From the IMG/VR virus record IMGVR_UViG_3300036715_003906, positions 62,001 through 126,000 of that record: DNA of 64,000 nucleotides, one strand, 5' to 3'. Below the pieces are notes generated by a model. That model was not told the origin of the DNA, searched no databases, and saw only the letters and a list, made by a program, of their open reading frames with translations. The translations under genes were made by a program, and so were the position numbers. Below, in pieces: positions 5,065-64,000 of this stretch (within the stretch, counting starts at the first letter, position 1; each line of letters opens with the position of its first letter).

Positions 5065-5868
5065 TCAGACTCCGGGTTCCATAACAGGGATCACAGCCTT
5101 GCGGGACATCGTTCGGACCCGGTGGCAGTTGGCGCACACCAGCTCACACTTGGCGATCTCTGCAAGGACTTTCTCACGGGACCAGGACCACATTGCGCTG
5201 ATGCCGGAGACCTTGTCGTCCTGGAGGTGATCGAAGTCCATCGCCGGATGATGCAGCGTCTTGCCGCAGTCCTTGCAGGGGGTCGCCTTGAGGGCAGAGA
5301 GCCACTCCCTGAACGCGCGCACCTTGGGAATCCTGGAAGCCCCCTTCCGGGCCTGTGTCCGTACCCGATGGCAGGCGCAGCAGACCAGCTCGCACTTCTC
5401 AAGCTCCGCCAAGACCGCCTCACGTCGATGGTTGGCCATCTTGCCGAGTGCCCACCGCTTCGTCCCGCGGACGTGGTCGAACTCCATGCAGAAAGGGGGG
5501 TACACCCCCACGCAGTCGAGGCAGGGCTTGCCCGCCTTGAGGCCATCGAGGAAAGCACGATGCTCCTGCCCCCGGCGCTGGTAATCCGACAGCAGATCGT
5601 CGCGGTGAGCCTCACGCCACTTGTCGGACGCGACCTTGTATTGGCCCTTTTTCTCGGCCCACCTCGCCCGGTTCGCGGCGTTCCGATCCGCTCGGTTTGC
5701 GGCATGGTGTGCCCGTCGAGCCATGTTCACCTCGGGGGTGAGATTCCGCGCGTTCATGTACGTCCTGTTGCACAGAAGGCACCACGAGCCGCAGCCATCG
5801 GCTCGCCGATTGTCCTTGACGAACTCGGACAAGGGCTTGTCCAGACGGCATTTCGAGCAGGTTTTCAT
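5065..5868 (-). CDS. HNH-type endonuclease with N-terminal Cys4 zinc finger and two tandem HNH-like domains (putative free-standing homing endonuclease)
   Basis: N-terminal CSKC...CLLC. Two copies of CxDC-x(8-9)-[ED]FDH-x~25-CELVCxxCHRVRT. Lower GC3 than its neighbours. Confidence 0.85.
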   Translation of the reverse strand: MKTCSKCRLDKPLSEFVKDNRRADGCGSWCLLCNRTYMNARNLTPEVNMARRAHHAANRADRNAANRARWAEKKGQYKVASDKWREAHRDDLLSDYQRRGQEHRAFLDGLKAGKPCLDCVGVYPPFCMEFDHVRGTKRWALGKMANHRREAVLAELEKCELVCCACHRVRTQARKGASRIPKVRAFREWLSALKATPCKDCGKTLHHPAMDFDHLQDDKVSGISAMWSWSREKVLAEIAKCELVCANCHRVRTMSRKAVIPVMEPGV

Positions 5869-13520: not shown

Positions 13521-13702
13521 GGGCCGGACCGGAGGAGGGTGTAAGCCGCGTAGGTGCTCCCCTGCTGCGTGCTCGGGGAGTTCGTCGTGGTGGCGGAGCG
13601 AAGGTAAGACTCGGCCCCAACCTTGATCCCCTGGGGGGAAACGCGGCTGACCTTGGGGATGCTCGCCCCCCTTCGCTGGCTCGGACCTTGGTCGACGCTC
13701 AC
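13377..13702. repeat. Direct repeat, two 144-bp copies (13377-13520 and 13559-13702), offset 182 bp
   Basis: Both copies encode MSVxQG.S.RRG...PKVSR.SP.GIKVGAESYLRSATTTNSPSTQQG. The last ~73 nt differ at one position. Confidence 0.95.
13517..13702 (-). CDS. 61-aa micro-protein paralogous to the N-terminal 48 aa of the downstream giant protein
   Basis: GAGG RBS before GTG 13702. Its stop overlaps the next start (GTGA). Confidence 0.7.
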   Translation of the reverse strand: MSVDQGPSQRRGASIPKVSRVSPQGIKVGAESYLRSATTTNSPSTQQGSTYAAYTLLRSGP

Positions 13703-13714
13703 GGTGCCTCACGA

Positions 13715-24679: not shown

Positions 24680-24846
24680 CAGCCACCCCGCTGGAGCTTT
24701 TCCAGCTTCCGCCGCAAGACCGCCAGCTCCGTCTCCGTCACCTTCTCCGTGAGCTGGATGATCTCCTTGAGCCGCCGGTTGATCCCCATCTCCGTCCGGT
24801 ACTCCCAGCCCGGGGTGGGCTCAGGGTCCTTGGTCTCCTCGCTCAT
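24679..24846 (-). CDS. 55-aa hypothetical protein (MSEETKDPEP...)
   Basis: Start re-called at ATG 24846 (ATGA overlap, GGAG RBS). Its stop overlaps the next ATG. Confidence 0.6.
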   Translation of the reverse strand: MSEETKDPEPTPGWEYRTEMGINRRLKEIIQLTEKVTETELAVLRRKLEKLQRGG

Positions 24847-49458: not shown

Positions 49459-52400
49459 TCAGTTACGGGTCCGGTCGTAGGTATACCCCGACAGCGGCGC
49501 GGGGCTCGGGGCGGCCGGGACGGAGACGGGCACGCGGGCCGGAGTGAAGCGCGCACTCCGTAGCCGGGCGGTCTTGTCCATGTAGTCGTCGAGGCCCGCC
49601 CCGACCTCGTCCCAGTCGAGGGGCTCCTCCAGGACCTCCTCGGCGTTCTCGACCACCTCGGCGTCCGTGGCGGGCACGGCGCCGGGGGTGAGGGTCTCCG
49701 GCTGCTGGACGTTCTGCCCGGGCTTGAGACCGGCCTCCGCGACGAAGGGCGACATGCCCCCGGGGCAGAGGATCGTAAGGGACTTCTGGGCCCGGGTGAG
49801 CGCCACGTACCCGAGCCGGCGCTCGGACTCCATGGCCGTCTGGGGGTCGACGAGCTGCTCCTCGCGGATCTCGTTCTCCTTGGGCTTGCGGGGCGCACGC
49901 TCCATCGGGAACTTGCCCTTGGGCATCATGAGGGTGACGTCGGGCCACTCGGCGCCCTTCGTCGAGTGCGCCGTCCCCAGGTAGACGCCCGGCGGGGGCT
50001 TGCGCTCGGAGAGCGGGACACCCTGGGCCACCTGCTGCTTCTCCCACTCGTCCGGATCGATCCGCAGCTCCTCCGACCGGCTGGCGAGCCCGTCGAACTT
50101 CGCCCGGAACTGGTGGGGGTCCTGGGGGTTGTAGTTCGGGTCGACCTCCTGGGGCTGCATCATCATCATGACGAACTCCAGAGACCCGAGGCTCGACTTC
50201 TCCTCCGTCAGCTCCGGGTCCTCCTCGGCCGCCTCCTGGCTCACCCGCGCTGACAGCCGGCGCACGGTGGCGTCATGGAAGGACTCGATGCGGGTCGCCC
50301 AGACGGTCTGGCCCGGGTCGGGCGGGATCACCTCGACGATGGGCAGGGCGAGGATGCTCTCGAACAAGTCCTTCGAGGAGAACTCCTTGTCCTGCATGTA
50401 GGAGCGGATATCCCCCAGGCCCTCGAGGAGCGGCTTGGCCTTCTGCGCATCCTTGGACGCCCGGTACACGGGGTCCCCCGTGATCCCCTGGATCATGGTC
50501 GAGAGGAACATCGGGTCCCGGACGCACGCCAGCAGGGGGTCGAAGGTGGCGAAGTCGAAGCGGTGACGGGCGCAGTAGTCCTGCATCGCCCGCTTCATGG
50601 CCTTCTCGGCCAGCTTGACGTTCTCCGCCCGGTCCGTCTGCGAGAACTTGGGCTTGATAATCCCGCCGTGGATGAGGGTCTGGCAGAAGGACTCCTGCAC
50701 CGCCCGGGGCGTCGAGCCCGTCGCCACGTTCATGAAGGACCGGAAGGTGTCCGTCTCCTGCGAGCCGAAGACCGAAGCGGCCTTCTTCTGGACGTACCGG
50801 GTCCCGGTGACCGCGCAGATGCGCTGGAACACCCCCAGCTCCGCGTTCGTCCGGGCGAGGACGGCGAAGTTGCTGAGGGGCTCCCCGGCCGCCGTGGCCA
50901 TCATGATCTTCTTGCCGAACTCCACCGCCGCGTCTGCGTCCGTATTCGGGACCAGGACGTTCAGGTTCGCCTCCCCCTTCACCCGGTGCGGGGCCGCCTT
51001 GGCCACCATGGGGATCTGGTTCGCGTTGTTGGCGATGAGCTTGTTTGCCGCGTCGACAAACTCCGGGGCGCAGCGGTAGTTCGTCGTGATCTGCCGGTCC
51101 TTGAACCCCATCTGATCGAGCGCGATGAAGTTGGCCGGGTCTGCACCACGGAACTGGTAGATCGACTGCTTGTCGTCGCCCACCATCCAGAAGGACTTGT
51201 CCTTGTCGTCCGTCTGGATGTGCTCCGTCATGAGCTGGAGGATCTCGAACTGAAGGGGGTTCAGGTCCTGGCACTCGTCGACCATGATGTGGTCGATGCC
51301 CGCCTGGACCTTCTTCCGGGCCTGGGGGTTCGCCTTGATAATGTCACGGAAGACCGCGAGCATGTCGTTGAAGTCCCCGACGCGCGGCTTGCCGCCCCGG
51401 TAGAAGTCCACGAACTTCGCGAACTTCGGCGTGCCCTTGGGGTTCGTCGAAGGGCCGCAGAGGTTCGGCCGCCACGACGTCCCGAGGCCGCCCTTGAGCC
51501 CCTCGTAGACCTCGTAGAAGCGGAGCGCCTGGTACGCCTCCATCGAGCCCTGCTTCTCGCACCAGTCCTTGACCTGGTCCATGGACATGCCCTGCCCCTG
51601 GAAGATGTTGAGGTAGGCCATCATCCGGGCCGACTTGGGGGGCATCTTCCACAGCTCGTCCGCCGGCACCTCGCGCTTCTCGCCCTCGGGGTCGCCCGGG
51701 GGGTCGCGATCGATGTACGGGAAGCACTCCTCCCAGATGTCCTTGGTCGCCTTGAAGAGGGCCGACGCCGACACCATCCCGCCCCGGCCGTTGACCCGGG
51801 CGAAGATGTTGACCTGGGCCGGTGTGCCGTAGGCATTGATGGCCGCCAGGAAGGTCGAGTGCATCGTCCCGACCGTGACCCCGTTCGCGTTCTTGTTCTT
51901 GGTCGTCGAGACCTTCCCCGACCCGACCTTGACCGCCATCTTCTGCGCCAGCTCTTCCGCCGCCTTCGTGTTGAAGGACATGGCGATCATCCGGTTCGGC
52001 GTGGCGCCGCTGTCGATCAGGTACTGGACCCGGGCGAGCAGGGTCGTGGACTTGCCCGACCCGGCGCCGGCCGACACCCGCACCTTGCCCCCCGTGAGGG
52101 CCGCCGACCGCTGCTCGGGATCGAGCTTGCGAAGGGCCGGGGGAACGTTGGCCTCGATGGCCGGATCCGTCGCCACGGCCACCGCCACGCTCGTGGCCAC
52201 CGCAATGGCCTCCGCACGGGTGATGGGTCCGTCAGGCGTCCCCGCCTTGTCCATGGCCCGCGTGGCCGCCTCGTGGGCCTCCGCCTCGACCTTGGCCAAG
52301 GTTGCCGACTGCTTGTCCCCCGCCTCCGCCCCCTCGTCACGGTCAGGCTTCGCCTCCCGCGTCACCTGCTGCGCAAACGACGCCTTGGTGGCATCCGCCA

Positions 52401-52995
52401 CCCCCTTGACCGCCTCCTGGATCGGATTGATCTGGACAGGTCCGGGGACCGCGACCTCGCTCGCCTTGTCGATCCACTTCTCGACGACCTTGTTCCGCAG
52501 CACGATGGCCGACAGACGCCCGAGGGCGGCATCCGGGTCATCCATCTTGGCCGCGTCCATGGCGTCGAGGGCCTCCTTGCGGGCCTTGTTGCTCGACCCA
52601 AAGACCGCCTTGGCCGTCGTCGACCCGCCCCGGGACAGGACCGACCGGAGCTTGAGCGCCCGGAGGGATGCCCCATCGGGGCTCGGGGGCGGCCGGAGAG
52701 CGGCCTCCAGGAGCTTGACGCTGGCCGGGGTCGTGAGACTCGACCGGATCGTCTGAGCGATGGCCTCCAGGCTCCCTCGCTCCACACGCCGGAGCAGGCT
52801 CAGGCCCTGCGACAGCGTGGGGTCCATGGGATCAACTACGCCTCGGGTCTCCTGCTGCCAGCGCATGAACGTGTCCACGCTCAGGAGAAGGACCAGGTAA
52901 TCGGCGACAGCCAACTCCCGGATGTCGGCGTCGTCCGTGTGGTCCGTCGCGACGGTGACGGGCAGGGGGCGTTCGTAGCGGAGTTCCATCGTCAT
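49459..52995 (-). CDS. uvrD: UvrD/Rep/PcrA superfamily-1 helicase with about 290-aa N-terminal extension, 1178 aa
   Basis: AGAGSGKS (I), TMHS (Ib), VDECQD (II), VGDDKQSIYQFRGA (III), TNYRC (IV), ARTN (IVa), TAHSTKGAEW (V), ERRLGYVALTRA (VI). Confidence 0.95.
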   Translation of the reverse strand: MTMELRYERPLPVTVATDHTDDADIRELAVADYLVLLLSVDTFMRWQQETRGVVDPMDPTLSQGLSLLRRVERGSLEAIAQTIRSSLTTPASVKLLEAALRPPPSPDGASLRALKLRSVLSRGGSTTAKAVFGSSNKARKEALDAMDAAKMDDPDAALGRLSAIVLRNKVVEKWIDKASEVAVPGPVQINPIQEAVKGVADATKASFAQQVTREAKPDRDEGAEAGDKQSATLAKVEAEAHEAATRAMDKAGTPDGPITRAEAIAVATSVAVAVATDPAIEANVPPALRKLDPEQRSAALTGGKVRVSAGAGSGKSTTLLARVQYLIDSGATPNRMIAMSFNTKAAEELAQKMAVKVGSGKVSTTKNKNANGVTVGTMHSTFLAAINAYGTPAQVNIFARVNGRGGMVSASALFKATKDIWEECFPYIDRDPPGDPEGEKREVPADELWKMPPKSARMMAYLNIFQGQGMSMDQVKDWCEKQGSMEAYQALRFYEVYEGLKGGLGTSWRPNLCGPSTNPKGTPKFAKFVDFYRGGKPRVGDFNDMLAVFRDIIKANPQARKKVQAGIDHIMVDECQDLNPLQFEILQLMTEHIQTDDKDKSFWMVGDDKQSIYQFRGADPANFIALDQMGFKDRQITTNYRCAPEFVDAANKLIANNANQIPMVAKAAPHRVKGEANLNVLVPNTDADAAVEFGKKIMMATAAGEPLSNFAVLARTNAELGVFQRICAVTGTRYVQKKAASVFGSQETDTFRSFMNVATGSTPRAVQESFCQTLIHGGIIKPKFSQTDRAENVKLAEKAMKRAMQDYCARHRFDFATFDPLLACVRDPMFLSTMIQGITGDPVYRASKDAQKAKPLLEGLGDIRSYMQDKEFSSKDLFESILALPIVEVIPPDPGQTVWATRIESFHDATVRRLSARVSQEAAEEDPELTEEKSSLGSLEFVMMMMQPQEVDPNYNPQDPHQFRAKFDGLASRSEELRIDPDEWEKQQVAQGVPLSERKPPPGVYLGTAHSTKGAEWPDVTLMMPKGKFPMERAPRKPKENEIREEQLVDPQTAMESERRLGYVALTRAQKSLTILCPGGMSPFVAEAGLKPGQNVQQPETLTPGAVPATDAEVVENAEEVLEEPLDWDEVGAGLDDYMDKTARLRSARFTPARVPVSVPAAPSPAPLSGYTYDRTRN

Positions 52996-53778: not shown

Positions 53779-55026
53779 CTACCCCCCCACGCCTTCGTCG
53801 AGGAGACGCTGGCACAGGAAATCAGGGTCCGTATAGGGTTCATCCTCCCGGACGACCAGGTAATGGAACCGGCCGTCCTCCCGTACCTGTCGCTCCTTCT
53901 CCCGGTCCCGCACCTGGAGAGCATCGAAGAGACCCCGGTCCTTGATATACACGGAGGGGAACTCCCAGTGCTGGAACCCGTGGAACTCGGCGATGAGGCG
54001 ATGCGAGGGGAAGAAACCGTCGAACCGGTAGAAGGCGTTTTTTGCGGACATGAATGCCCGCGACCGCCACTCCATCTCGTAGGTCGCGCCCCCAAGAACC
54101 TTCGCGACAGCTTCCAGGAAAAGGGTCTGGCTAATGAACCGGTGAAAGGTCGGGAGGCCGTGGCGCTGGCATTCACGCTTGACCACGGCGAAGTCGTGCC
54201 CGAGACCCGCCATCGCCCGACCGATCGCGATCTTGCCGTTGCCAAGTGCGAAGGGCAACAGCGCATCCTTGTCCAGACGGATCGTGGCGCGCTCTGCCCT
54301 CTCCCGCACGTAGCGATGGCTGAGGCGGAGACCCAGGCGGCCCATGTACTTTGTCACGGTCTCCTCCGTGACGCTCAGCTCCTCAGCCATGGCCTTCCGG
54401 TCAACCGCCCCGGTCGCGTCCAGGTACGGCGTGAAGTCGACGTCGGAGAGGTCCAGCGCACGGCCTGACGGGACGCCCATCTTCAGGGCGGAGAGCTTCT
54501 CCGACGTGGAAAGGAGGCCCGGATGGTCCTGCTTTGTGAGCCCCCTCGACCACGACGCTCGCCCCCTCATGGCCTCCGCTGCGTGAGCTACCCGCTCGTC
54601 CGTCTCTTTGGTGAGCCCGCGGTTCCAGCCCGCCGCCGCGGACATCTTCGCCCGGGTCTCGGGGGACAAGGGGCGGCCCTTCAAGGGCGAAGGAGCCCGT
54701 GGACGGACTGCCCGCTGGACACGAGCCTCCTGCCTCTCCCGGTCCTTACACGCCGGGCACCGGGCCTGAAGGGACGCGGTCAGCCCCACCTCATGAACGG
54801 CACCACAAGGGCAGGTGGCGGCCTTCTTCTTACCCGCCCTCGGGCTCTCCGCGTGCTGCTTGACGAAAGCCGCCTTGCGGTTGGCCTCGCACGCCTCCGA
54901 CCGAATACGGGCCCCCGGGTACTGCCCCCGATACGACTCGGCCGAGACCCCGTGCGCCGCCTTGAGGTGGCGGGCCAGTGTCTCGGCCGAGTGCCCACAG
55001 ACCAAACAAGTCACCCTCGTTTCCAT
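53779..55026 (-). CDS. Putative homing endonuclease: Zn finger, NUMOD3-like repeats and a DUF559/Vsr-like PD-(D/E)xK nuclease, 415 aa
   Basis: CLVC...H...H; KGRPLSPETRAKMS; WNRGLTKE/WSRGLTKQ; RFDGFF...IAEFHG.QHW...D..K. Lower GC with an AT-rich leader. Confidence 0.75.
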   Translation of the reverse strand: METRVTCLVCGHSAETLARHLKAAHGVSAESYRGQYPGARIRSEACEANRKAAFVKQHAESPRAGKKKAATCPCGAVHEVGLTASLQARCPACKDRERQEARVQRAVRPRAPSPLKGRPLSPETRAKMSAAAGWNRGLTKETDERVAHAAEAMRGRASWSRGLTKQDHPGLLSTSEKLSALKMGVPSGRALDLSDVDFTPYLDATGAVDRKAMAEELSVTEETVTKYMGRLGLRLSHRYVRERAERATIRLDKDALLPFALGNGKIAIGRAMAGLGHDFAVVKRECQRHGLPTFHRFISQTLFLEAVAKVLGGATYEMEWRSRAFMSAKNAFYRFDGFFPSHRLIAEFHGFQHWEFPSVYIKDRGLFDALQVRDREKERQVREDGRFHYLVVREDEPYTDPDFLCQRLLDEGVGG

Positions 55027-55050: not shown

Positions 55051-58000
55051 TTAGAAACAAGGGGTTGATTTTGTCTTATGCTGTGCTAAGAGTCGGGCGC
55101 GCAGGTTGAAGGTCAGGATAAGGTACAGCAGGGGGAAGACCGGCTGGTAGTACGCCTCGAACCGCAGCACCGTGGGGTCATCGGGGTCGATGGCCGAGCT
55201 GACCCCGCTGAAGGCCGCGATGATCTCCGCCTGGATGAGCTGCCGGAGGAGGCCGGTCATCGAGACGTTGACCTCGTTCGTCCGGCTCGCCAGGAACTTG
55301 GTCCCGACGAAGGAGTCGAGGAGGAGCCGCGACTGCTGCTGCACGAAGTCCGCGATCTGCGTGACCGTGGGCGTCCGGGTCAGGATGTTGTCCATCCGGG
55401 TCGTGAGGCCGTGGCGGATACGGATGATCGGGTCGAGGTCCTCCAGCACCGTGACGCCCGCGACCGCCGTCTGGTTGGCCTCGACGGCGTCCAGGATGCG
55501 GGGGATGCGGGTGATGCCGAGGAGCTTCCGCCGATCGTAGGGTGTCGCCACGTCGACCGCGGGGCTCACGACCGCCCCCGAGAGGGCCGCCGCGAACACC
55601 GTGCCGTCCGTGAGCTGCTCGAAGTTCTGCCCCAGCTCATCCGTGAGGGTGATCACGGACGAATCGGGGTAGAGGGCGATGATCCGGTTGCTCGCCATGG
55701 CCCGCGCCACCGTCTGGGCGTTCTGGGGGCTCGTCCCGGAGGCGAAGCCAATGAAGCCGAGGCGCTCGCTCTGGTGGAGCGTGTCGCTCATCACCTCGAC
55801 GTGCCGGGTCAGGTACGAGTAGATCGCCGTGGTCGTCCCGAGGGGCACGAGGACGTCCGGCCGGATGTTCCCGGGCAGGGGGGTCCCCAGCTCATCGATC
55901 GCCGTGATGAAGTCCCGGTCCGACGCCTGGCTCGTGCCGGGAACCTTGAGCACCTGCTTGACCCCGACGAGCAGGGAGCCGTTGGTGATCGCCAGGTAGG
56001 CCGCGAGGCTCACCCGGTTCTCCGCCGACACCCGGCCGTAGTTGGCCTCGATGGTCTTGAGCTGCCGGAAGATCCGGGTGTCGAAGCCCTGCTTCATGTA
56101 GTTGTAGCTGACGTAGTACACGTCACCCACAGCCGGCTCGACACCCCCGGGGTTGAAGGTCTGGAGGGTCGAGGTGTCGTTCACCGCCACCCCCACCGTG
56201 TTGCTCACCGTCAGCTCCAGGCCGGGGACCGCGTAGCCGGGGCGGGCGGGGTCAACCTGGAAGGTGGGGCTCACCGTGAGGGTGAAGCTCCCGGCGTTGG
56301 CGTAGGACCCGACCTGCGAGGGCAGGACCGAGAAGCGGAGGCCCGTGGCGGGGTCCGTGTAGGTCTGCCCCGGGACGCCCGTCCCCGCGGAGCCCGCGGG
56401 GTGGGTCGAGGTGACCGTGTAGATCTGCTGGGCATCCTCGCCGACATCCCCGTCCGTCGCCGGGGTGACGCCCACGCCCGTCGAGATGTTGAAGGCGCTG
56501 TTCGAGGAGGTGGCAAACCCCACGCTGCTCGTCGACAGGCCCGTCGTCAGGGACTCGATCGTGAGGTAGGTCTGCCCGTTGATCGTGGCGGCGTAGGCGA
56601 CGCCCGCCGCGGTGAAGCCCGCCGTCGTCATGAGGACGTCGACCACCTCGCCCGGGGTGACCATCGTCTGACCCGCCGCGTCGCCCTGCGTGAAGCCGAG
56701 GACGTCGTTGGCGTTGCCGTCGAGGATGGTCAGGGACGAGCCGGGGTCGTTCGTCGGGCTCGTGAGCCGCAGGTGGTTCAGGTTACCGAGGGTCCCGACC
56801 GAGGCGACGCCCGAGAGCCCGGCGATGGCGTTGATCGCCACGGCGACCGCCGAGGTGGCGACCGCCGCTCCCGCGGGCAGCGTCATCTGGTAGTCGGTCC
56901 CGTTCATGCGGAACTTGAACGTGTCGTTCAGGCCCGCCGTGATGGCGAAGGTGCCCGCCAGGCTCCCGAGGAGGGTCGAGGGCTTGTTGACGGCCCCCGG
57001 CGTCCCCACGGCCGACTGGAAGGGCGCGAAGCCCAGCGTGGCCTCGGCCGTGCCCGGGTTGACCTTGGCCGTGGAGACGACGTCAAAACCGCCGGGGAGC
57101 GCGCCGGGCGTCGTCGTGCTGGTGACGATGAAGAAGAGGTCGCCCGTCGAGCCGCCGATCTGGACGAAGCTCGCCACCGAAGACCCGACCTCGACGTTGA
57201 TGTCCGAGACGATCTGGGTCGGCGTCCGGTTGCCCGCCGTCAGCGTCACGGGGATGACCGTGTCGTCCACGACCAGGTTGAGGACGTCGTTGACCGTGGC
57301 CGTGATCGTGATCTTGCCCGCGTCGGGCCCGGTCTGGATCGGGGTCACATGACCGCCGACCAGGACCGCGGGGGACGCCGTCGCGAGGTTGCTCGTGATC
57401 GTCGACCCGTTCAGCCGCGTGGCCCAGGTGGCCGAGTAGGGGGTGTAGAAGCTGTACGGCCCCGCGCCCTTGATCGTGTAGGCCGCGTTCTTGGCGACGG
57501 CCTGCCCGAAGGTGACCGTCACCGTCTCGCTCACCGGCGTCCCGGTGCCCGCGTGGAAAGCGTCGGGGATCTGCTCGACCCCCCGGGGCCACTGGACAAT
57601 CTGGGGCAGGGCCGACTTGGTCCCGAAGCGCACCTGGTAGAGCGGCGCATCGAGGGTCGTCGAGAAGACCTCGTACTGCCCGACGCCAACCGGACCCGCC
57701 ACCTTGTTGGTCAGCAGGTAGGTGTCATCGACGATCCGGTTGTAGTAGAAGGTCGCGAAGGCCGTCCAGTCCGGGGGGACCGCCGCCGCGAGGGTGAGGA
57801 GACGGCTCGCGCCGTCCACCTTGAGCACCTTGACGGGGGGACGGTTCAGGGCGTCCCGCAGGTTCCGACCCACCCGCACGACCACGAGGTCGGGGCGGTT
57901 CGTGATGACGTCCTGCTTGACGTTGGTGACCGAGGAGTAGAGGGACACCCCGAGCTGCGTGTCCCGGCCGTTCCCCGTGGTGGGGATCTCGGGCATCACG

Positions 58001-59334
58001 AACTGGGTCGCCGAGACCGTCGCCGGAATCGTCGTGCTGTCGATGAGGCGGCTGCACTGGGCGAGGTACATCTTCTCGTCCACGAGCTGGCCGGTCACCT
58101 GCGAGGAGCCGAAGGGCTCGGCCCCCGGGGTCGTCGTGGCCGGGGCCACGAGCCAGCTCGTCCCCCAGTGAATGACCGAGACGTCAGGCGAGGGGTTCAG
58201 GATGACGAAGTCCTGCCCCTGGATGTAGTCGGCCCGCGAGGGGGCGATGCCGCACCGGTCGACCGAGGTGACCAGGGTGTTCGGCAGGTAGTCGAAGGTG
58301 TCCTGCCAGGTGTTCGCCCAGTAGGTCACCGTGACCGTGCTGCCCATGGCCGGGGCGTAGGGGAGGGTGACCGCCCCGTTGGCCCCGTCCACCGCCGACG
58401 GGATGACCTGGGACCCGTTGACCTTGACGACCACCTTGCTCGTGTCGGTCGTCGTGAGGCCCGAGCCCGTGCCGTCCACGATGGGCCGGTTGAAGACCGT
58501 GAAGGTCGCGTTCCGGTTCGTGACCGTGAAGCTCGTGAAGCCGAGGGGGCCGTTGGCCGTCCCGTCCTGGACCTCCAGACTCTGGGTCGCCGTGAACATG
58601 ACGTGGTTCTCCCCATGCCCGTCCATGTACACGGACGTCGAGAAGTTGGGGAGCAGGAGGGCGTCGAACTGCGCCTTGACCCCCGAGGCCGTGAGGTTGC
58701 CCGCCGTCAGCGTCAAGGTCCGGGCCACCCCGTTGACCTTGAACTTGAAGATGTCGTTCGACCCGGCGACGATCACGAAGGGCTCGAAGCCCGGCGTCGT
58801 CAGGGTGGCGACCGCCCCCGTCACCTGCGAGGAGACGTCATCCGTGAAGCTCGTGTCGCCCCGGTGGAAGTAGTACGTCGCCCGCACCAGGTCCGTCGGC
58901 TGCGTCGGAATCTGGAGCGTGATGAGCCCCTTCTGCCCCGACACCCCGCCGAGAGCCACCGGCACCCCGTTGACCGTGACGCTCACCGACCGGATATCGT
59001 TCGTCACGCGGCCGAACCCCTGCCCATCGACGATGGGGTTGTTCTTCACGCGGAACGTCACGTAGGTCCCGTTCTGGGCCCCGAGGATCAGCTTGGCCGG
59101 GTTGGCGGCGTCCACCACCCACGAAACAGAAACGTCCTCGTTGACGATCTGCTGGTCGACCGTCGAGGACGAACCCCGGACGATCTCCACGTTGAACTGC
59201 GACAGCTCTTGCTGACCGACCCCGATCTCGACCGGGATACGAAGGCCCGCCACGAGGTTCGAGGCGTTGGCGTCCGTGAGGGTCCGGGAGTAAACGCCGG
59301 GGGGAACGTAGGTGACAAAGGGTCCGACGGACAT
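55051..59334 (-). CDS. Contractile tail sheath protein with many inserted domains, 1427 aa
   Basis: N-terminal YVPPGVY. C-terminal sheath core 'IRIRHGLTT...TVTQIADFVQQQ...FVG.K...YYQPVFPLLYLILTFNL'. Confidence 0.9.
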   Translation of the reverse strand: MSVGPFVTYVPPGVYSRTLTDANASNLVAGLRIPVEIGVGQQELSQFNVEIVRGSSSTVDQQIVNEDVSVSWVVDAANPAKLILGAQNGTYVTFRVKNNPIVDGQGFGRVTNDIRSVSVTVNGVPVALGGVSGQKGLITLQIPTQPTDLVRATYYFHRGDTSFTDDVSSQVTGAVATLTTPGFEPFVIVAGSNDIFKFKVNGVARTLTLTAGNLTASGVKAQFDALLLPNFSTSVYMDGHGENHVMFTATQSLEVQDGTANGPLGFTSFTVTNRNATFTVFNRPIVDGTGSGLTTTDTSKVVVKVNGSQVIPSAVDGANGAVTLPYAPAMGSTVTVTYWANTWQDTFDYLPNTLVTSVDRCGIAPSRADYIQGQDFVILNPSPDVSVIHWGTSWLVAPATTTPGAEPFGSSQVTGQLVDEKMYLAQCSRLIDSTTIPATVSATQFVMPEIPTTGNGRDTQLGVSLYSSVTNVKQDVITNRPDLVVVRVGRNLRDALNRPPVKVLKVDGASRLLTLAAAVPPDWTAFATFYYNRIVDDTYLLTNKVAGPVGVGQYEVFSTTLDAPLYQVRFGTKSALPQIVQWPRGVEQIPDAFHAGTGTPVSETVTVTFGQAVAKNAAYTIKGAGPYSFYTPYSATWATRLNGSTITSNLATASPAVLVGGHVTPIQTGPDAGKITITATVNDVLNLVVDDTVIPVTLTAGNRTPTQIVSDINVEVGSSVASFVQIGGSTGDLFFIVTSTTTPGALPGGFDVVSTAKVNPGTAEATLGFAPFQSAVGTPGAVNKPSTLLGSLAGTFAITAGLNDTFKFRMNGTDYQMTLPAGAAVATSAVAVAINAIAGLSGVASVGTLGNLNHLRLTSPTNDPGSSLTILDGNANDVLGFTQGDAAGQTMVTPGEVVDVLMTTAGFTAAGVAYAATINGQTYLTIESLTTGLSTSSVGFATSSNSAFNISTGVGVTPATDGDVGEDAQQIYTVTSTHPAGSAGTGVPGQTYTDPATGLRFSVLPSQVGSYANAGSFTLTVSPTFQVDPARPGYAVPGLELTVSNTVGVAVNDTSTLQTFNPGGVEPAVGDVYYVSYNYMKQGFDTRIFRQLKTIEANYGRVSAENRVSLAAYLAITNGSLLVGVKQVLKVPGTSQASDRDFITAIDELGTPLPGNIRPDVLVPLGTTTAIYSYLTRHVEVMSDTLHQSERLGFIGFASGTSPQNAQTVARAMASNRIIALYPDSSVITLTDELGQNFEQLTDGTVFAAALSGAVVSPAVDVATPYDRRKLLGITRIPRILDAVEANQTAVAGVTVLEDLDPIIRIRHGLTTRMDNILTRTPTVTQIADFVQQQSRLLLDSFVGTKFLASRTNEVNVSMTGLLRQLIQAEIIAAFSGVSSAIDPDDPTVLRFEAYYQPVFPLLYLILTFNLRARLLAQHKTKSTPCF

Positions 59335-59434
59335 GGAGTCTCCTGGTGAGAGCCTTTAGGGATGCGGGTGTGAGTGCGGGGCTCCCCGAAGGGGTCGGAT
59401 CTTGGTCTGGATGTGGGGACGGAAGAGGGGACGG

Positions 59435-59460
59435 GTCCGCCGCTTCACCCTGCGGCGGAC
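59435..59460 (-). other. 9-bp hairpin in the sheath 5' leader
   Basis: GTCCGCCGC-8nt-GCGGCGGAC, directly after a CTTCTATG motif (59461-59468). Confidence 0.6.
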
Positions 59461-59470
59461 CATAGAAGCC

Positions 59471-59935
59471 TTACCGGGCCTTCTGCTTCGCCCGGGCCCT
59501 GGCTTCCTCCCGGTGCGTGAGAAGGCTCGCCACGGCCTTGTGGGCCGTCTCCCGACGAGCCACGGCCCCTGTCGGCGTGAGGGTCTCGTACTCCGTCCAC
59601 CCGGGGCCATCGACCCTCCGGAGCTTGGGCGTCCCGCCCCCCGCCCGGGCCGCCTCCTTCACCTTGGCGCGGTCCCCGTAGTAGACCCAGCGACGGTCTG
59701 CATCCCGGCCCACCGCGTGGTCCGCCGTGGGGTAGTCGTCCTTGTGGACCCCGCTGTTACCCTCCTTCGCCTTGGGCGTCTCGAAGGCGAAGGCAAAGCC
59801 CTGGTCCTTGAAGAGCCGGGGGGCCTGCTCATGGCAGAGGGAGCAGGCATGGGACAGGTTCGGGCCCATCTTGAGGATGAGGTCGAACGTGAGCCCGCAG
59901 TCGGGGTTCTGGCACTCGAAAACGTACTTGGGCAT
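59471..59935 (-). CDS. FmdB-family zinc-ribbon protein, 154 aa
   Basis: MPKYVFECQNPDCG..F...CSLC...APRL. Confidence 0.8.
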   Translation of the reverse strand: MPKYVFECQNPDCGLTFDLILKMGPNLSHACSLCHEQAPRLFKDQGFAFAFETPKAKEGNSGVHKDDYPTADHAVGRDADRRWVYYGDRAKVKEAARAGGGTPKLRRVDGPGWTEYETLTPTGAVARRETAHKAVASLLTHREEARARAKQKAR

Positions 59936-59949
59936 GGGGTCTCCGATCT

Positions 59950-61110
59950 CTATTTGATGCGTTCGTAGCTGTGATTGCGGTTTGGCAAGACAGGGGCCGT
60001 CGCCGACGTGAGACCGAGGTGCAAGGCCCCCTCGACCCCCTGCGTACCGTCCTGGCGTTCCCCTGTCACCTTGCTGAACGTGAGGGGGAGCGGAATGTGG
60101 ACCTCCCAGTCCGCCCGGAACTGGATGCCCAGGCTGGCCGTGTAGAAGAAGAGGTCCCCCGTCTCGTCGTAGGACTCCTCCGCCGTCCCCCCGATGCTGA
60201 TGTCGAGTAGCTCGATGCCCTCGAACTCCAGGACCGGCTTCTTCTCGGCCGTGAGGGTCATGACCGCGAAGTCCGCGATCTCCTCCATCTGGATTGGATC
60301 CGTCGCGATCACGTCCACGTCGAAGGAAAGCTCGTACTTTCCCCCGTAGGCCATCGCTGCCTGGACCCTGTCCTGGTAGACGGACACGGCGACCTTGTCC
60401 CCCTTCCGGGCCCGCTTGCCGAAGGCCAGGACGACGCCGGGCAAGGTCAGGGCGTCGGACGTGTTCCAGTAGAACTCCTGGGGCCCGATGCTGTCCCCGG
60501 GGTAGCGGTAGTCGGCCGTGACCGTCGTCCCCCCAGGAAAGGCCGCCTGAAAGGTGATGGCCCCCTTGCCGTCCACCACGTAGTCCCGCCCCGGCTGCAT
60601 GAGCACCCGCTGGTTCAACCAGAGGCGTAGCGTCTTCGGGGCCGGCGCGTGACGGAGCTGGGCCGCCCGCTCCACCCCGGAGACGAAGCGCAAAACCGGC
60701 TCGTCCGTCACGGTGTAGAGGGGGTCGATGATATAGGTCCCCGGCGTCTGGGGCGTGTCAGGCGCCTCCAGGACCTCCAGGAAATAGACGCCCGGGGCCG
60801 TGGGCATGACGTCCCCCTTCTGCTGGACGACCGCCAGATCCTCCCGGACCCATTCGAGGGGGTACGACGGGGGGCCCACGTAGGACAGCATCGTCCGGGA
60901 GTGGATGGTCCCGACGAAGTTGTCCGCGGAGAGGACCACCTTGTTCGCGCTCGCCCCCTTGACCACAATGCCGAAGTGCGGCCTCTCCTCGAAGCTGTAC
61001 TTGTCCTGGATGAAGGGGACGATCTTCGCGTAAATCGGATGACGGCTGAAGCTGTCCTGAAGCTCGACGATCAGCCGCCGCTTCATCGACGAGAGCAGGT
61101 AGTAGTACAC
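59950..61110 (-). CDS. Putative tail completion/terminator (neck) protein, 386 aa
   Basis: Upstream of the sheath. C-terminal alpha/beta region 'SFDVDVIATDPIQMEEIAD...FYTASLGIQFRADW'. Confidence 0.5.
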   Translation of the reverse strand: MYYYLLSSMKRRLIVELQDSFSRHPIYAKIVPFIQDKYSFEERPHFGIVVKGASANKVVLSADNFVGTIHSRTMLSYVGPPSYPLEWVREDLAVVQQKGDVMPTAPGVYFLEVLEAPDTPQTPGTYIIDPLYTVTDEPVLRFVSGVERAAQLRHAPAPKTLRLWLNQRVLMQPGRDYVVDGKGAITFQAAFPGGTTVTADYRYPGDSIGPQEFYWNTSDALTLPGVVLAFGKRARKGDKVAVSVYQDRVQAAMAYGGKYELSFDVDVIATDPIQMEEIADFAVMTLTAEKKPVLEFEGIELLDISIGGTAEESYDETGDLFFYTASLGIQFRADWEVHIPLPLTFSKVTGERQDGTQGVEGALHLGLTSATAPVLPNRNHSYERIK

Positions 61111-61118
61111 GCCCCCCC

Positions 61119-61144
61119 GGGCGGCACAGGTAGTTTAGCCGCCC
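61119..61144 (-). other. 7-bp hairpin between the actin-like and tail-completion genes
   Basis: GGGCGGC-12nt-GCCGCCC, intergenic. Confidence 0.4.
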
Positions 61145-61154
61145 CCGGCCGCCC

Positions 61155-62162
61155 TCACTCCTCTTCGGAGGCGAGAACCAGGAGCCCCTCGGCGACCGCC
61201 GTCATCGGGTCCGAGGCGGGCACGATGTCGCTGACCTCGATGGGAAAGCCCTTCTTCTTGACCGCCTGGAACTCCTGCTTGAACACGTCGAGGAAGTTCT
61301 TGGCTCGCGTCGTGCCCCCCGAGACGACGAGCGGCACGGCCTCGGGCAAGTCGACCGCCGCCGTCCCCTTGCGCACGAAGTCCGCCGTCTGCTGGAGCGT
61401 GTAATGGACGAGCGACCGGATGTAGACGACCAGCGCCTCCTCCTCGCGCCCCTTGGGGTGGAGCAGGTCGACCCCCCGCTCCTTGATCGCGCAGACCTTG
61501 GCCGAGGTCGACCCGAGGGCCCGGGCCGTCTGGCTGTCGATCCAGTCCCCGCCCCGGGAGAGGCTGAACGCAAAGGCCGGCACCGTCTGGTAGGCCAGGG
61601 CGATGTTGGCCATCCCCGAGCCGTAGCTGATCGCCAGACCCGAGAAGGTCGAGCCCGCGCACTGGCTGTAGATGACCGCCTCCGCCTCGTTCTTCGGGTG
61701 CGCCGTGTACCCGAAGCCGCTCAGGATCTGGCGGAGGCTCTCCGTGTGGAAGATGACGTCCTGCCCCTCCTGATCCACCGGAGCCGCCGGGACGGAGTAG
61801 TAGCAGTGCTCCCCCTCGACCACGGGCTCCCCGATGACGTTGTGCAGGAGGTACGAGAGGATCTTCTGCGCGTCGAGTTCCCCCGCCGACACCACGCCCC
61901 GGGCGAGCGGCCTACGCAGGTCCCGCTTGAAGAGGTTGGCAAGCGTGAGGGCGCTGTCCCCGAGGACCAGGAGCTTGTCCCCCTCAACGATGTAGTCGAC
62001 CTTGCCCATCTTGAGCTGCTTCTTGGCCGACTCGTCGAGGTCGATGAAGCAGTCACGGATGCGCCGGATCGAGGTCTTGCCCCCCTCGGCCATCCGGGCC
62101 GAGACGAGGTTCATGGTTCCGATATCGAGGCCCACGCCGGGCCGGTTGAGGTCCTTGCTCAT
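61155..62162 (-). CDS. Actin-fold (MreB/FtsA/ParM-like) ATPase, 335 aa
   Basis: Phosphate-1 GLDIGTMNL, connect-1 NEAEAVIY, phosphate-2 variant ISYGSGMAN, adenosine VVSGGT, connect-2 DPMTAVAEG. Confidence 0.85.
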   Translation of the reverse strand: MSKDLNRPGVGLDIGTMNLVSARMAEGGKTSIRRIRDCFIDLDESAKKQLKMGKVDYIVEGDKLLVLGDSALTLANLFKRDLRRPLARGVVSAGELDAQKILSYLLHNVIGEPVVEGEHCYYSVPAAPVDQEGQDVIFHTESLRQILSGFGYTAHPKNEAEAVIYSQCAGSTFSGLAISYGSGMANIALAYQTVPAFAFSLSRGGDWIDSQTARALGSTSAKVCAIKERGVDLLHPKGREEEALVVYIRSLVHYTLQQTADFVRKGTAAVDLPEAVPLVVSGGTTRAKNFLDVFKQEFQAVKKKGFPIEVSDIVPASDPMTAVAEGLLVLASEEE

Positions 62163-62171
62163 ACCGGCCCC

Positions 62172-62849
62172 CTACACCGATCCGGGCTCCATCCTTTGCC
62201 GGAGCAGGTACGCCAGCTCCTCGTGCTTGTCCGCGATGCCTTGCAGCAGGTTGTCCAGGCCGGGCGTGAGCAGCCCCTTTTGCCGGAGCTGCCCGTACAC
62301 GAGGTCGAGCAAGACAAGGAAGCGCAGGAGAGCCCGGAAGCTCACCGCCACCGGGTCCGGAGCCGCCTCTTGCTTGTGGGGGCCGAGGTAGGATTCGAGG
62401 AAGACCCCCCGGGCATGGTGCTGCGGGAGTACCCCCACCAGCGCCGCCGACCCGAGGCCCACCGTCCGCTCTGCCAGGGCATCGACGAGGGCGTAGGTGT
62501 CGTCGTAGAGGCGCTGGAATAGCTCATGGTCGGCATAGAAGGCCGGCCCCTTGCTCTGCCAGTGGCTCCCCAGGTGAACGTCCACCTCGGCCCGTAGGGC
62601 CGCGAGGACCACGGCCAGCTCCGCCATCGGCACCCCGCCGAAGTCGGCGAGCAAGTGCGTGAGGATGATCTCCGCCTCGACCCCGGGCTGGGCCGCCATC
62701 CGGTGGACAAAGGACCACAGCCGGTGGCGATGAGGCGCCGTGGAGGCGCTCTTCGTCCGGGCGATGCGGGGTGCGGGCTTCCCGGGGAGGTAAGGAGGAC
62801 CGTCACGCAGTGCGTCGTACCCCAACTGATCCGTCCAGAGGTCAGGCAC
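62172..62849 (-). CDS. dps: Dps-like ferritin-fold protein with basic N-terminal extension, 225 aa
   Basis: HW...H...D...E with exact Dps spacing H-x11-H-x14-D-x3-E (SHWQSKGPAFYADHELFQRLYDDTYALVDALAER). C-terminal 'KHEELAYLL'. Confidence 0.8.
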   Translation of the reverse strand: MPDLWTDQLGYDALRDGPPYLPGKPAPRIARTKSASTAPHRHRLWSFVHRMAAQPGVEAEIILTHLLADFGGVPMAELAVVLAALRAEVDVHLGSHWQSKGPAFYADHELFQRLYDDTYALVDALAERTVGLGSAALVGVLPQHHARGVFLESYLGPHKQEAAPDPVAVSFRALLRFLVLLDLVYGQLRQKGLLTPGLDNLLQGIADKHEELAYLLRQRMEPGSV

Positions 62850-62852
62850 GAG

Positions 62853-63386
62853 TCACCCCCCCGTGCGAGCGGAGAGCTGGTCGGCGACGGCCCGGGCCTC
62901 GTCCGCGAGGGCCTCGATGGACCGGATGACCGGCCGGGCGTAGTCCACCGCCCCGATCCCGTGCGACTGGGCCAGGGCCTCCGCCGACGCTCGCCGCACC
63001 CGCTCGACGTCCGCCACACGAGCCGTGATGACCCCGAGGGCCGGGTGGTTCGGGGTGCGGAGGAAGTCGCCCGCCACCGCCTCTGGATCGAGACCCAGAT
63101 CGGCGGCCTTCTTCGCCTTGCCCTTGCCCTTGTCGGCCTTCTCGGCCTTGGCGTCCTCCTTCAGCTCCTTGCCCACGTCCCCCATGCTGACCTTCTCGGG
63201 CTTGGCCGAGAAGGTCTTGCCCGTGTACGGGGAGCGGACGCTCACCATCTTCTTCGGGAGGTAGAAGTCCTGCTTCGTTTCCGGGCAGGTATAGAGCCAG
63301 AGGGACGTGGCCGCGGTCTTGTCGTCGGCGGTCTTCTCGACAAGGAACTGGGCGAGATCAGCGAGGTGGGCTTGGCGGGGGTGCAT
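62853..63386 (-). CDS. Hypothetical protein, 177 aa
   Basis: GGAGGAG RBS; internal CPET..F / SPYTG..F pseudo-repeat; Lys/Ala-rich linker. Confidence 0.7.
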   Translation of the reverse strand: MHPRQAHLADLAQFLVEKTADDKTAATSLWLYTCPETKQDFYLPKKMVSVRSPYTGKTFSAKPEKVSMGDVGKELKEDAKAEKADKGKGKAKKAADLGLDPEAVAGDFLRTPNHPALGVITARVADVERVRRASAEALAQSHGIGAVDYARPVIRSIEALADEARAVADQLSARTGG

Positions 63387-63419
63387 GTCGTCTCCTCCAC
63401 ACCGGTGGGGAAAAGGACT

Positions 63420-64000
63420 TTACCGCCCCTGCTTGATTCGCCGCAGGGCCTCCCGGGCACTCTCCGTCCCCCCCTGCTGGGTCGACTCCGTGACCGTCAC
63501 CCGCCCGCCCTCGGGCTTCTCGAACGTGGGGAGAAAGATCGGGACGTCCGACGAGGACGACGAGCCACCCTGAACGTGGACGTGGGACGGGGCCGCCGGA
63601 ACGCCCACCGTGACGACCGCCGGCCGGGACTGGAGTTCCGTGAGGAGCGTGAGCATCTGGTCAAAGCGGGGGTCGGGGGCGGGGCCCTTGGACGCGACCA
63701 GGCCCTGGAGAATACGGATCTCCGCGTCCCGCTCACCCACCTGGGCCTGGGTCCGTGCCAGGTGCTCCCTCAGTCCCTCGACCTGGGCCTGGAGGTCAGC
63801 CTTCTCCCGCTCCAGCACCGCGAGCCGGTCCTGCACGTCCGTGTCCACGGGGGGCCCGCCCCCCTCCAGGGGCAGTCCCCGCCTCACCCGCGCAAGGAGA
63901 CTCTGGTTGACCGCCCGCCACAGGTCGCGGGAGGAGAGAGCCTTGTCCGTCGCTATCGCCACCACCTCACCCTCCGTGATGATCAGCGAAAGATCCGCGA
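63420..64000 (-). CDS. Coiled-coil protein, partial (frame open past the window end)
   Basis: The in-frame sequence stays open to 63998 (ADLSLIITEGEVV...). Heptad segment LAVLEREKADLQAQVEGLREHL. Confidence 0.7.
   Translation of the reverse strand, partial: ADLSLIITEGEVVAIATDKALSSRDLWRAVNQSLLARVRRGLPLEGGGPPVDTDVQDRLAVLEREKADLQAQVEGLREHLARTQAQVGERDAEIRILQGLVASKGPAPDPRFDQMLTLLTELQSRPAVVTVGVPAAPSHVHVQGGSSSSSDVPIFLPTFEKPEGGRVTVTESTQQGGTESAREALRRIKQGR

What the first reader, a model, noticed from the sequence alone, without database searches (positions are those of the whole stretch)
62172..62849. Dps-like mini-ferritin with intact ferroxidase signature among structural genes
It has the exact H-x11-H-x14-D-x3-E spacing of the Dps ferroxidase centre plus a ~65-aa basic extension (KPAPRIARTKSASTAPHRHR). 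Dps N-tails bind DNA (established for E. coli Dps). Its location in the late operon suggests protection of replicating or packaged phage DNA from Fenton damage, iron sequestration, or a co-packaged internal head protein.
Basis: partly seen in the sequence, partly recalled or inferred. Interest (0 to 1): 0.6.

Follow-up and report, generated by a model that had tools for sequence, protein, structure and literature searches.

The report
Huge-phage Dps mini-ferritin beside actin gene
This gene of a very large uncultured phage encodes a genuine Dps-type iron-detoxifying protein that carries a strictly conserved extra peptide at its front end and almost always sits next to a phage actin-like gene; phage Dps genes are already known, so it is an interesting variant, not a new kind of system.

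Summary
The ORF at 62172-62849 (-) is real. It encodes 225 aa, and the H-x11-H-x14-D-x3-E pattern occurs once in all six frames of the 251-kb phage record. It belongs to the Dps family:
- A family profile hits only Dps chains in the PDB (best E 1.5e-13).
- The AF2 model (pLDDT 88.8) superposes on Dps at Z 17.
- A predicted homodimer (ipSAE 0.52 against 0.00 for controls) places D123/E127 opposite H96' as in Dps.

The "basic DNA-binding tail" reading is not supported. The basic patch is specific to this lineage, and the N-extension is net acidic in most relatives. What is conserved is an N-terminal peptide, W-x-D-P-x2-Y-D-x4-G-P-P-Y-L-P, whose partner is unknown.

The gene lies in a tightly spaced block (g177, Dps, Volactin-type actin, terminator-like g386, Zn-ribbon, sheath-like g1427). 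Dps sits directly upstream of the actin gene in 64 of 71 related huge-phage loci. It is missing from one close relative and from a distant subclade, so it is an accessory gene.

Most likely it is a ferroxidase-active, probably dodecameric Dps that limits iron/peroxide damage during infection. The rivals, a virion-packaged protein or an adaptor for the actin filament, remain open. I class it as a new variant of a known kind, of moderate interest.

The parts
62172..62849 (-). Dps-like gene, 225 aa, GTG start
   Evidence: ORF; PDB phmmer hits are almost all Dps; profile against PDB gives E 1.5e-13; AF2 pLDDT 88.8; Z 17.2 to Dps
62784..62840 (-). Conserved N-terminal peptide, residues 4-22 (W-x-D-P-x2-Y-D-x4-G-P-P-Y-L-P)
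   Evidence: G17 and P18 are invariant and P19/Y20/L21/P22 nearly invariant in 24 long forms. The peptide or a near variant is present in ~53 of 55 distinct actin-linked relatives. It is unique in the genome, has low confidence in the monomer model and is not in the confident dimer interface.
62700..62780 (-). Lineage-specific basic patch, residues 24-50
   Evidence: 7 K/R and no D/E here, but the N-extension is net 0 to -9 in all but one of the relatives that carry it. The column block is variable in the alignment.
62469..62564 (-). Ferroxidase-centre segment, H96 to E127 (H96, W97, D107, H108, D123, E127)
   Evidence: Invariant in 53 of 53 homologues. The exact pattern is found in 54 of 55 distinct linked relatives and once per genome. 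D123 contacts H96' and E127 contacts W97' in the predicted dimer.
62175..62645 (-). Dps four-helix-bundle core, residues ~69-225 (helices A 76-98, B 104-132, BC 140-158, C 166-190, D 196-220)
   Evidence: AF2 secondary structure; aligned range 68-225 to Dps chains at rmsd 2.3-2.8 A
61155..62162 (-). Volactin-family actin-like ATPase, 9 nt downstream of Dps
   Evidence: PF25216 E 2.7e-66. Dps lies directly upstream in 64 of 71 related loci.
62853..63386 (-). g177, upstream gene of the block (weak FYDLN_acid-like match)
   Evidence: PF09538 E 0.0049, below the curated cut-off; conserved upstream of Dps in many relatives
59950..61110 (-). g386, conserved block member, possibly a tail terminator (lead only)
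   Evidence: 51-63% identical across the main clade. ESM-atlas features lie near SP10_terminator at 0.91. No Pfam, PHROG or PDB sequence hit.
59471..59935 (-). Zn-ribbon protein, 154 aa, block member
   Evidence: PF09723 E 1.7e-5, below the curated cut-off; conserved in the block
55051..59334 (-). g1427, conserved giant protein, probably the tail sheath (lead only)
   Evidence: 52-68% identical across the main clade. The C-terminus lies near DUF2586/Phage_sheath clusters at 0.92-0.94. No sequence-level confirmation, and the AF2 model failed.

Best explanation
The gene encodes a true Dps-family mini-ferritin. Each subunit is a four-helix bundle. Two subunits pair about a two-fold axis so that H96/H108 of one chain and D123/E127 of the other form the inter-subunit ferroxidase centres. 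The dimers most likely assemble into the usual 12-mer shell, which oxidises Fe(II) with H2O2 or O2 and stores the iron. The gene belongs to a clade of huge, high-GC phages from microbial mats, sediments and fresh water, and it is accessory. It is very probably co-transcribed with the neighbouring actin-like gene, just upstream of tail genes. During the long infection it lowers free iron and peroxide, and so limits Fenton damage to the large replicating or packaged genome.

The roughly 70-residue N-extension is not a generic basic DNA-binding tail. Its conserved element is an exposed proline/aromatic peptide. Displayed twelve times on the shell surface, it would dock the particle to a partner that is not yet identified.

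Shown: fold, family, ligand conservation, predicted dimer geometry, synteny. Inferred: 12-mer, catalysis, timing, physiological role, role of the peptide.
For: Sequence:
- The top 51 PDB phmmer hits are all Dps-family chains; the only other matches are two RNA-polymerase chains at E > 0.2.
- A 53-sequence family profile hits 53 PDB sequences, all Dps, with the best at 1.5e-13 across the whole bundle.
- Pfam Ferritin is matched by 43 of 53 members and DUF5856 by 37 of 53.
- PHROG 3636 matches at 8.9e-9.

Fold:
- AF2 gives pLDDT 88.8 and pTM 0.81.
- The Foldseek top hits are all Dps.
- VIA gives Z 17.2, rmsd 2.3 A over 142 residues, and 48 of the top 50 entries are Dps or Dpr.

Ligands:
- H96, W97, D107, H108, D123 and E127 are invariant in 53 of 53 homologues.
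- The exact pattern is found in 54 of 55 distinct linked relatives, although overall identity is only 33-41%.

Oligomer:
- The homodimer scores ipSAE 0.52 (three runs: 0.52-0.60) against a best control of 0.00. In calibration this mark was reached by 20 of 30 solved homodimers and 1 of 23 monomers. Contacts agree 100% between runs and partner pLDDT is 82.
- The contacts D123-H96' and E127-W97' match Dps geometry.

Context:
- Gaps of 3 and 9 nt separate Dps from the flanking genes.
- Baseplate and tail PHROG hits lie on both sides.

Precedent:
- Phage Dps-like genes have been proposed as oxidative-stress protectants (PMC8008677, PMC6669764).
Against: - No activity, oligomer size or expression data exist.
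- The single-sequence Pfam Ferritin score (17 bits) is below the gathering cut-off of 24.5.
- The secondary site-B position (+4 after H108) is Q here and varies among E, D, Q and M in the family.
- The dimer pass may reflect the predictor's memory of solved Dps structures.
- A plain antioxidant role explains neither the invariant N-terminal peptide nor the near-obligate adjacency to the actin-like gene.
Confidence: 0.6

Rival explanations
1. The protein is packaged into the virion, as an internal head protein or a protein ejected with the DNA. The N-terminal peptide acts as the targeting or docking signal, and the Dps shell protects the packaged or just-injected genome.
For: - The Dps-fold protein gp346 of megaphage G appears among the structural matches, and it was reported in the virion proteome (PMC12484599).
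- Three uncultured-phage proteins labelled 'Prohead protease' contain a Dps-like fold segment.
- The gene lies in a long array with tail and baseplate genes.
- A conserved terminal peptide is what a targeting signal would look like.
Against: - The gene is missing from a close relative (L057) and from a distant subclade that keep the neighbouring tail genes.
- No head, portal or protease gene was identified next to it.
- The peptide is unique in the genome, so it is not a signal shared by several cargo proteins.
- Short-form relatives lie beside a DNA polymerase or RNA-repair genes.
- The 'Prohead protease' labels are unverified annotations.
Confidence: 0.15
2. The Dps shell is an adaptor for the adjacent Volactin-type filament, analogous to ParR for ParM or AlpA for AlpC. 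Its twelve exposed N-terminal peptides bind the actin-like protein, so that Dps-bound phage DNA or a Dps-DNA condensate is positioned or moved in the cell.
For: - Dps lies directly upstream of the actin gene in 64 of 71 loci, typically 30-90 nt away and 9 nt here.
- The N-terminal peptide occurs only in the actin-linked forms.
- Five records with short-form Dps, one of them 100% complete, have no Volactin gene.
- Precedent exists for a phage actin with a neighbouring DNA-binding adaptor: AlpC/AlpA (PMC4446434, PMC5539076).
Against: - Seven actin-bearing loci have no Dps and no transplanted peptide.
- Two of 55 linked Dps proteins lack the peptide.
- The extension is mostly acidic, and no DNA-binding tail is conserved.
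- There is no iteron or centromere-like array near the pair.
- An adaptor role would not need invariant ferroxidase ligands.
- The co-occurrence is confounded by shared ancestry.
Confidence: 0.12
3. This is the first reader's mechanism: the basic N-terminal stretch binds and condenses DNA as the Lys-rich N-tail of E. coli Dps does.
For: Residues 24-50 carry 7 K/R and 3 H with no acidic residue. The nearest relative, P0002, keeps part of the patch. A few relatives have Lys-rich C-terminal extensions that could play this role instead.
Against: The patch falls in the most variable block of the alignment. The net charge of the extension is 0 to -9 in all but one of the relatives that carry it. Selection acts on the proline/aromatic peptide, not on charge.
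Confidence: 0.08
4. The protein is an iron donor or chaperone for iron-containing tail parts, such as iron-loaded spikes or fibres. This would explain its place in the tail module.
For: Only its location among tail and baseplate genes. That iron ions occur in some phage spikes and fibres is general knowledge and was not checked here.
Against: No protein in the window has clustered HxH motifs; only isolated single HxH occurrences were found. The gene is dispensable in relatives that have the same tail genes.
Confidence: 0.03

Closest known systems
Bacterial and archaeal Dps (DNA protection during starvation) dodecameric mini-ferritins. The best profile hit is Nostoc punctiforme Dps4 (5hjf); the best structural matches are M. 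smegmatis Dps2 (8hwz) and Thermoleptolyngbya Dps1 (6lkp).
   Same: It has the four-helix bundle with a BC helix, the HW...DH...D...E inter-subunit ferroxidase ligands at the canonical spacing, and the predicted two-fold dimer geometry.
   Different: - Identity to these proteins is only 17-24%.
- The single-sequence Pfam score is below the cut-off.
- A roughly 70-residue N-extension adds two extra helices and an invariant proline/aromatic peptide that no solved Dps covers.
- It is encoded by a phage. Among 185,579 species genomes the pattern scan confirmed only 3 MAG contigs, one of which carries the same phage block.
Previously noted phage Dps-like proteins: PHROG 3636 and 858, Pfam DUF5856, Lactobacillus phages (LP65 Orf120, Semele), gut 'Gratiaviridae', and megaphage G gp346.
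   Same: They share the fold and are phage-borne. An oxidative-stress or DNA-protection role has been proposed for them but not tested (PMC8008677, PMC6669764, PMC12484599).
   Different: Those proteins are mostly short forms of about 140-190 aa without the N-terminal peptide, and they lie in replication or metabolism contexts (PMC6669764). This subfamily has the conserved peptide and a fixed position between g177 and an actin-like gene upstream of tail genes.
Actin-adaptor pairs of mobile elements: ParM/ParR and the prophage pair AlpC/AlpA.
   Same: An actin-like ATPase gene lies next to a small gene whose product could link cargo to the filament.
   Different: There is no homology to ParR or AlpA, and no centromere-like repeats nearby. 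The candidate adaptor is a ferroxidase shell. The interaction is untested.

Membership tests
Dps (ferritin superfamily, dodecameric mini-ferritin) | Four-helix bundle with a short BC helix in the long crossover loop | tested here: met
   The AF2 model has helices A, B, BC, C and D. VIA gives Z 17.2, rmsd 2.3-2.8 A over 142-149 residues to Dps chains, and 48 of the top 50 entries are Dps or Dpr. Foldseek agrees. The BC helix is longer than usual, at about 19 residues.
Dps (ferritin superfamily, dodecameric mini-ferritin) | Inter-subunit ferroxidase ligands His, His, Asp, Glu at H-x11-H-x14-D-x3-E, with Trp after the first His | tested here: met
   H96, W97, H108, D123 and E127 are present. They are invariant in 53 of 53 homologues, match in 54 of 55 linked relatives, and the pattern occurs once in the genome.
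Dps (ferritin superfamily, dodecameric mini-ferritin) | Significant sequence-profile similarity to Dps and to no other family | tested here: met
   The family profile hits 53 PDB sequences, all Dps, with the best at 1.5e-13. Single-sequence phmmer gives 4.9e-6 to MrgA. Caveat: the single-sequence Pfam PF00210 score is 17 bits, below the cut-off of 24.5, although 43 of 53 family members match PF00210.
Dps (ferritin superfamily, dodecameric mini-ferritin) | Two-fold dimer that brings His ligands of one chain opposite Asp/Glu of the other | tested here: met
   This is a prediction only. ipSAE is 0.52 against a best control of 0.00, a mark reached by 20 of 30 solved homodimers and 1 of 23 single chains. 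Contacts agree 100% between runs and pLDDT is 82. The contacts include D123-H96' and E127-W97'. The pass may reflect the predictor's memory of solved Dps structures.
Dps (ferritin superfamily, dodecameric mini-ferritin) | Assembly into a hollow 12-mer with 23 symmetry | not testable with these tools
Only the dimer was modelled.
Dps (ferritin superfamily, dodecameric mini-ferritin) | Fe(II) oxidation by H2O2 or O2 and iron core formation | not testable with these tools
   This needs biochemistry.
E. coli-type DNA-binding Dps (subset of the family) | Conserved Lys/Arg-rich flexible terminal tail | tested here: not met
   The basic patch (residues 24-50) is specific to this lineage. The extension has net charge +1 here and 0 to -9 in all but one of the relatives that carry it.
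ParR/AlpA-like filament adaptor (considered for the novel reading) | Binds the partner actin-like protein through a terminal peptide | not tested
There is only co-occurrence evidence.
ParR/AlpA-like filament adaptor (considered for the novel reading) | Cognate repeated DNA site (centromere, alpS or parC) near the operon | tested here: not met
   Only short two-copy repeats inside coding sequence were found in 59300-64000.

The most novel reading that the evidence does not exclude
The Dps shell and the adjacent Volactin-type actin form a two-part phage cytoskeletal module. The twelve surface-exposed W-x-D-P...G-P-P-Y-L-P peptides tether the ferritin-like particle, and whatever DNA or cargo it holds, to phage-made actin filaments. 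This would give huge phages an actin-based way to position or protect their genome, functionally parallel to ParMR or AlpAC but built on a mini-ferritin.
Probability: 0.12. Interest if true: 0.8.

Novelty: new variant of a known kind. Interest (0 to 1): 0.45.

Why it matters
Phage-borne Dps genes have been noticed several times but never characterised. This study defines a coherent subfamily with three properties: more than 50 distinct members on contigs up to about 530 kb, catalytic residues under strict selection, and an equally conserved surface peptide with no known partner. The gene is locked next to a phage actin-like gene.

If the protein is simply an antioxidant, it shows that iron and peroxide stress limits the long infections of huge phages in redox-stratified habitats. 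If the peptide docks the shell to the actin filament or to the virion, it reveals a new use of the Dps cage. It would also offer a natural, peptide-addressable nanocage.

Tried and rejected
1. Identity of g1427 as tail sheath. Pfam, PHROG, PDB phmmer, a 6-sequence profile against the PDB, and a DUF2586 search of the genome all found nothing. AF2 of the C-terminal 428 residues with a shallow alignment failed at pLDDT 28. Only ESM-atlas feature similarity (0.92-0.94) points to sheath families, so this stays a lead.
2. Expression timing. No RNA run holds the stretch, there are no sigma-70-like promoters, and terminator-like sites are at chance level. The GC-rich hairpins after the actin gene and after the Zn-ribbon gene fold no better than shuffles, with z -0.46 and -1.27.
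3. The peptide as a shared targeting signal. No other ORF in the 251-kb record carries it.
4. The peptide moved to another protein in actin-bearing loci without Dps. None was found.
5. Iron-loaded tail idea. No tail protein in the window has clustered HxH motifs.
6. Centromere-like repeats near the Dps-actin pair. None was found.
7. tblastn against 50,697 deposited phage genomes gave one marginal hit. The clade is absent from cultured phages.
8. No claim here rests on absence of relatives.

Full report
**What is there**

The minus-strand ORF at 62172..62849 encodes 225 aa from a GTG start. The start lies 3 nt after the stop of the upstream gene and is preceded by a G-run. The window is positions 62001-126000 of a 251,474-bp IMG/VR virus record. 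CheckV estimates that record at 53% complete, and its GC content is about 68%. This is therefore a huge phage. Elsewhere the record carries a tmRNA and 33 tRNA genes. Near-identical DNA occurs in microbial-mat, sediment and freshwater metagenomes, and no RNA run holds it.

The pattern H-x11-H-x14-D-x3-E (H96, H108, D123, E127) is present. It occurs once in all six frames of the whole record. The database's own gene call starts at M51 and gives 175 aa. Residues 4-50 are conserved in relatives, and M51 is not. The long form is therefore correct.

**Family**

Sequence evidence:
- The top 51 single-sequence phmmer hits in the PDB are all Dps-family chains, with B. subtilis MrgA best at 4.9e-6. The only other matches are two RNA-polymerase chains at E > 0.2.
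- Pfam Ferritin scores 17 bits, below its cut-off of 24.5. PHROG 3636 matches at 8.9e-9.
- The word search found 53 homologues.
- A profile built from them hits 53 PDB sequences, all Dps. The best is Nostoc Dps4 at 1.5e-13, aligned across the whole bundle.
- Of the 53 members, 43 match Pfam Ferritin and 37 match the phage family DUF5856.

Structural evidence:
- The AF2 model (pLDDT 88.8, pTM 0.81) shows helices A 76-98, B 104-132, BC 140-158, C 166-190 and D 196-220. Two extra helices (35-53 and 58-69) and a low-confidence segment (1-34) precede them.
- The Foldseek top hits in the PDB are all Dps.
- VIA gives Z 17.2 at rmsd 2.3 A over 142 residues. Of the top 50 entries, 48 are Dps or Dpr and 2 are mini-bacterioferritins. 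Only residues 68-225 are covered.

Oligomer evidence:
- A homodimer prediction scored ipSAE 0.52 (runs 0.52-0.60) against 0.00 for the best of three controls.
- In calibration that mark was reached by 20 of 30 solved homodimers and 1 of 23 single chains. Contacts agree 100% between runs and pLDDT is 82.
- The contacts D123-H96' and E127-W97' match the Dps inter-subunit ferroxidase geometry.
- The pass may partly reflect the predictor's memory of solved Dps structures.
- The 12-mer and catalysis could not be tested.

**Conservation**

H96, W97, D107, H108, R113, Y115, D123, E127 and several helix-D residues (G197, N200, D207, L215) are invariant in all 53 homologues. Of 55 distinct, untruncated relatives found next to the actin gene, 54 keep the exact pattern HW-x9-DH-x14-D-x3-E. 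Overall identity to the window protein is only 33-41%. The position +4 after H108, which I recall (not checked here) as a site-B ligand in L. innocua Dps, is Q here and varies among E, D, Q and M in the family.

**The extension**

The net charge of the extension is +1 here and 0 to -9 in all but one of the relatives that carry it. What is conserved is residues 4-22, with the consensus [AV][ILV]W-x-D-P-x2-[YF]-[DN]-x4-G-P-P-Y-L-P.

Properties of this peptide:
- G17 and P18 are invariant in the 24 long forms aligned.
- It, or a near variant such as GAPYLP or GPPYMP, is present in about 53 of 55 linked relatives.
- It has low confidence in the monomer model and is not part of the confident dimer interface.
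- It is unique in the genome.
- Short-form phage Dps proteins lack it.

Its partner is unknown.

**Context**

The gene order on the minus strand is g181, g177, Dps, Volactin-family actin-like ATPase (PF25216, 2.7e-66), g386, a Zn-ribbon protein and g1427. The gaps between them are 33, 3, 9, 44, 14 and 136 nt.

Genes further along the same strand include:
- a MucR/Ros-like protein and a UvrD-type helicase;
- baseplate wedge, hub and tail-lysozyme matches;
- upstream, a minor-tail match.

By ESM-atlas features, g386 lies near a tail-terminator family and the C-terminus of g1427 lies near sheath families. These are leads only. "Among structural genes" is therefore fair. "Late operon" is untested.

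**Linkage in relatives**

The block recurs in 8 loci found through Dps. Searching with an alignment of the actin gene found 276 viral contigs, of which the best 80 were kept. Of 71 loci with at least 1.5 kb upstream of the actin gene, 64 have the Dps ORF directly upstream, usually 30-90 nt away.

The seven exceptions are:
- one close relative (L057), in which g177 abuts the actin gene;
- six members of a distant subclade, whose g1427 is about 37-40% identical.

None of these carries the peptide on another protein. Dps is therefore tightly linked but dispensable, and it evolves faster than its neighbours, which are 51-68% identical.

Short-form relatives in other huge phages lie beside a DNA polymerase (L014). 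In L018 the Dps domain sits within a 421-aa ORF next to tRNA nucleotidyltransferase and RNA ligase genes. Five short-form records, including one complete 536-kb genome, have no Volactin gene. A pattern scan of one genome for each of 185,579 species confirmed only three MAG contigs. One of them, in a 'Lysinibacter' bin, carries the same phage block.

**Known precedent**

Dps-like genes have been reported in several places:
- Lactobacillus phages, near replication genes (PMC6669764);
- gut 'Gratiaviridae' and 36 other phage genomes (PMC8008677);
- megaphage G, whose ferritin-like gp346 was detected in virion proteomics (PMC12484599). gp346 also appears among the structural matches.

The BFVD matches further include three proteins labelled 'Prohead protease' and one labelled 'ParB' that contain a Dps-like segment. 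Those labels are unverified. A phage actin with a neighbouring DNA-binding adaptor is known from the prophage pair AlpC/AlpA (PMC4446434, PMC5539076).

**Interpretation**

The best-supported reading (confidence 0.6) is a ferroxidase-active, probably dodecameric Dps. It acts as an accessory protectant against iron and peroxide damage during infection, and it carries a surface peptide for docking to an unknown partner.

The rivals are:
- a virion-packaged protein (0.15);
- an adaptor for the actin filament (0.12);
- DNA binding through the basic tail (0.08);
- an iron donor for tail parts (0.03).

The plain antioxidant model leaves the peptide and the adjacency to the actin gene unexplained. That is why the rivals keep appreciable weight.

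**Novelty**

This is a new variant of a known kind. Phage Dps is known. The long form, with its invariant peptide and fixed Dps-actin pairing across a large huge-phage clade, was not found in the papers held here.

Noticed in passing
window 61155-62162 (-): A huge phage encodes a Volactin-family actin-like ATPase (PF25216, E 2.7e-66). Relatives are encoded on 276 IMG/VR contigs, and the best 80 are 51-66% identical. None of the papers found by the literature searches run here describes a phage-encoded Volactin.
   Followed up: partly
window 55051-59334 (-): A 1427-aa protein is 52-68% identical across the main clade. It has no Pfam or PDB sequence match, and its C-terminus resembles tail-sheath families only by language-model features. 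The AF2 model failed at pLDDT 28.
   Followed up: partly
G000:C1:200303-211667 and 248035-248110 (outside the window): A tmRNA gene (tag ANDNVALVALAA) and 33 tRNA genes, most of them in one array. Two have odd anticodon loops.
   Followed up: no
window 5065-5868, 49459-52995, 53779-55026 (-): An HNH endonuclease, a 1178-aa UvrD-type helicase and a MucR/Ros-like protein sit within the tail and baseplate gene array.
   Followed up: no
window ~59436-59463 (-): A perfect 10-bp GC-rich hairpin lies just after the Zn-ribbon gene and before g1427. It has no U-run and is no more stable than shuffles (z -1.27).
   Followed up: yes
P0005, P0011, P0016; L028, L035, L065: Some long-form relatives carry extra C-terminal extensions of 130-230 aa rich in Lys and Glu. 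These could be DNA-binding tails in those lineages.
   Followed up: no
L018:7542-8807: In another huge-phage lineage the Dps domain sits within a 421-aa ORF, behind an unassigned N-terminal segment of about 150 aa and ahead of about 130 unassigned C-terminal residues. The ORF lies next to tRNA nucleotidyltransferase and RNA ligase genes.
   Followed up: no
window 7743-14069 and 24843-30947 (-): Two giant ORFs (2108 and 2034 aa) in the baseplate region have almost no family matches.
   Followed up: no
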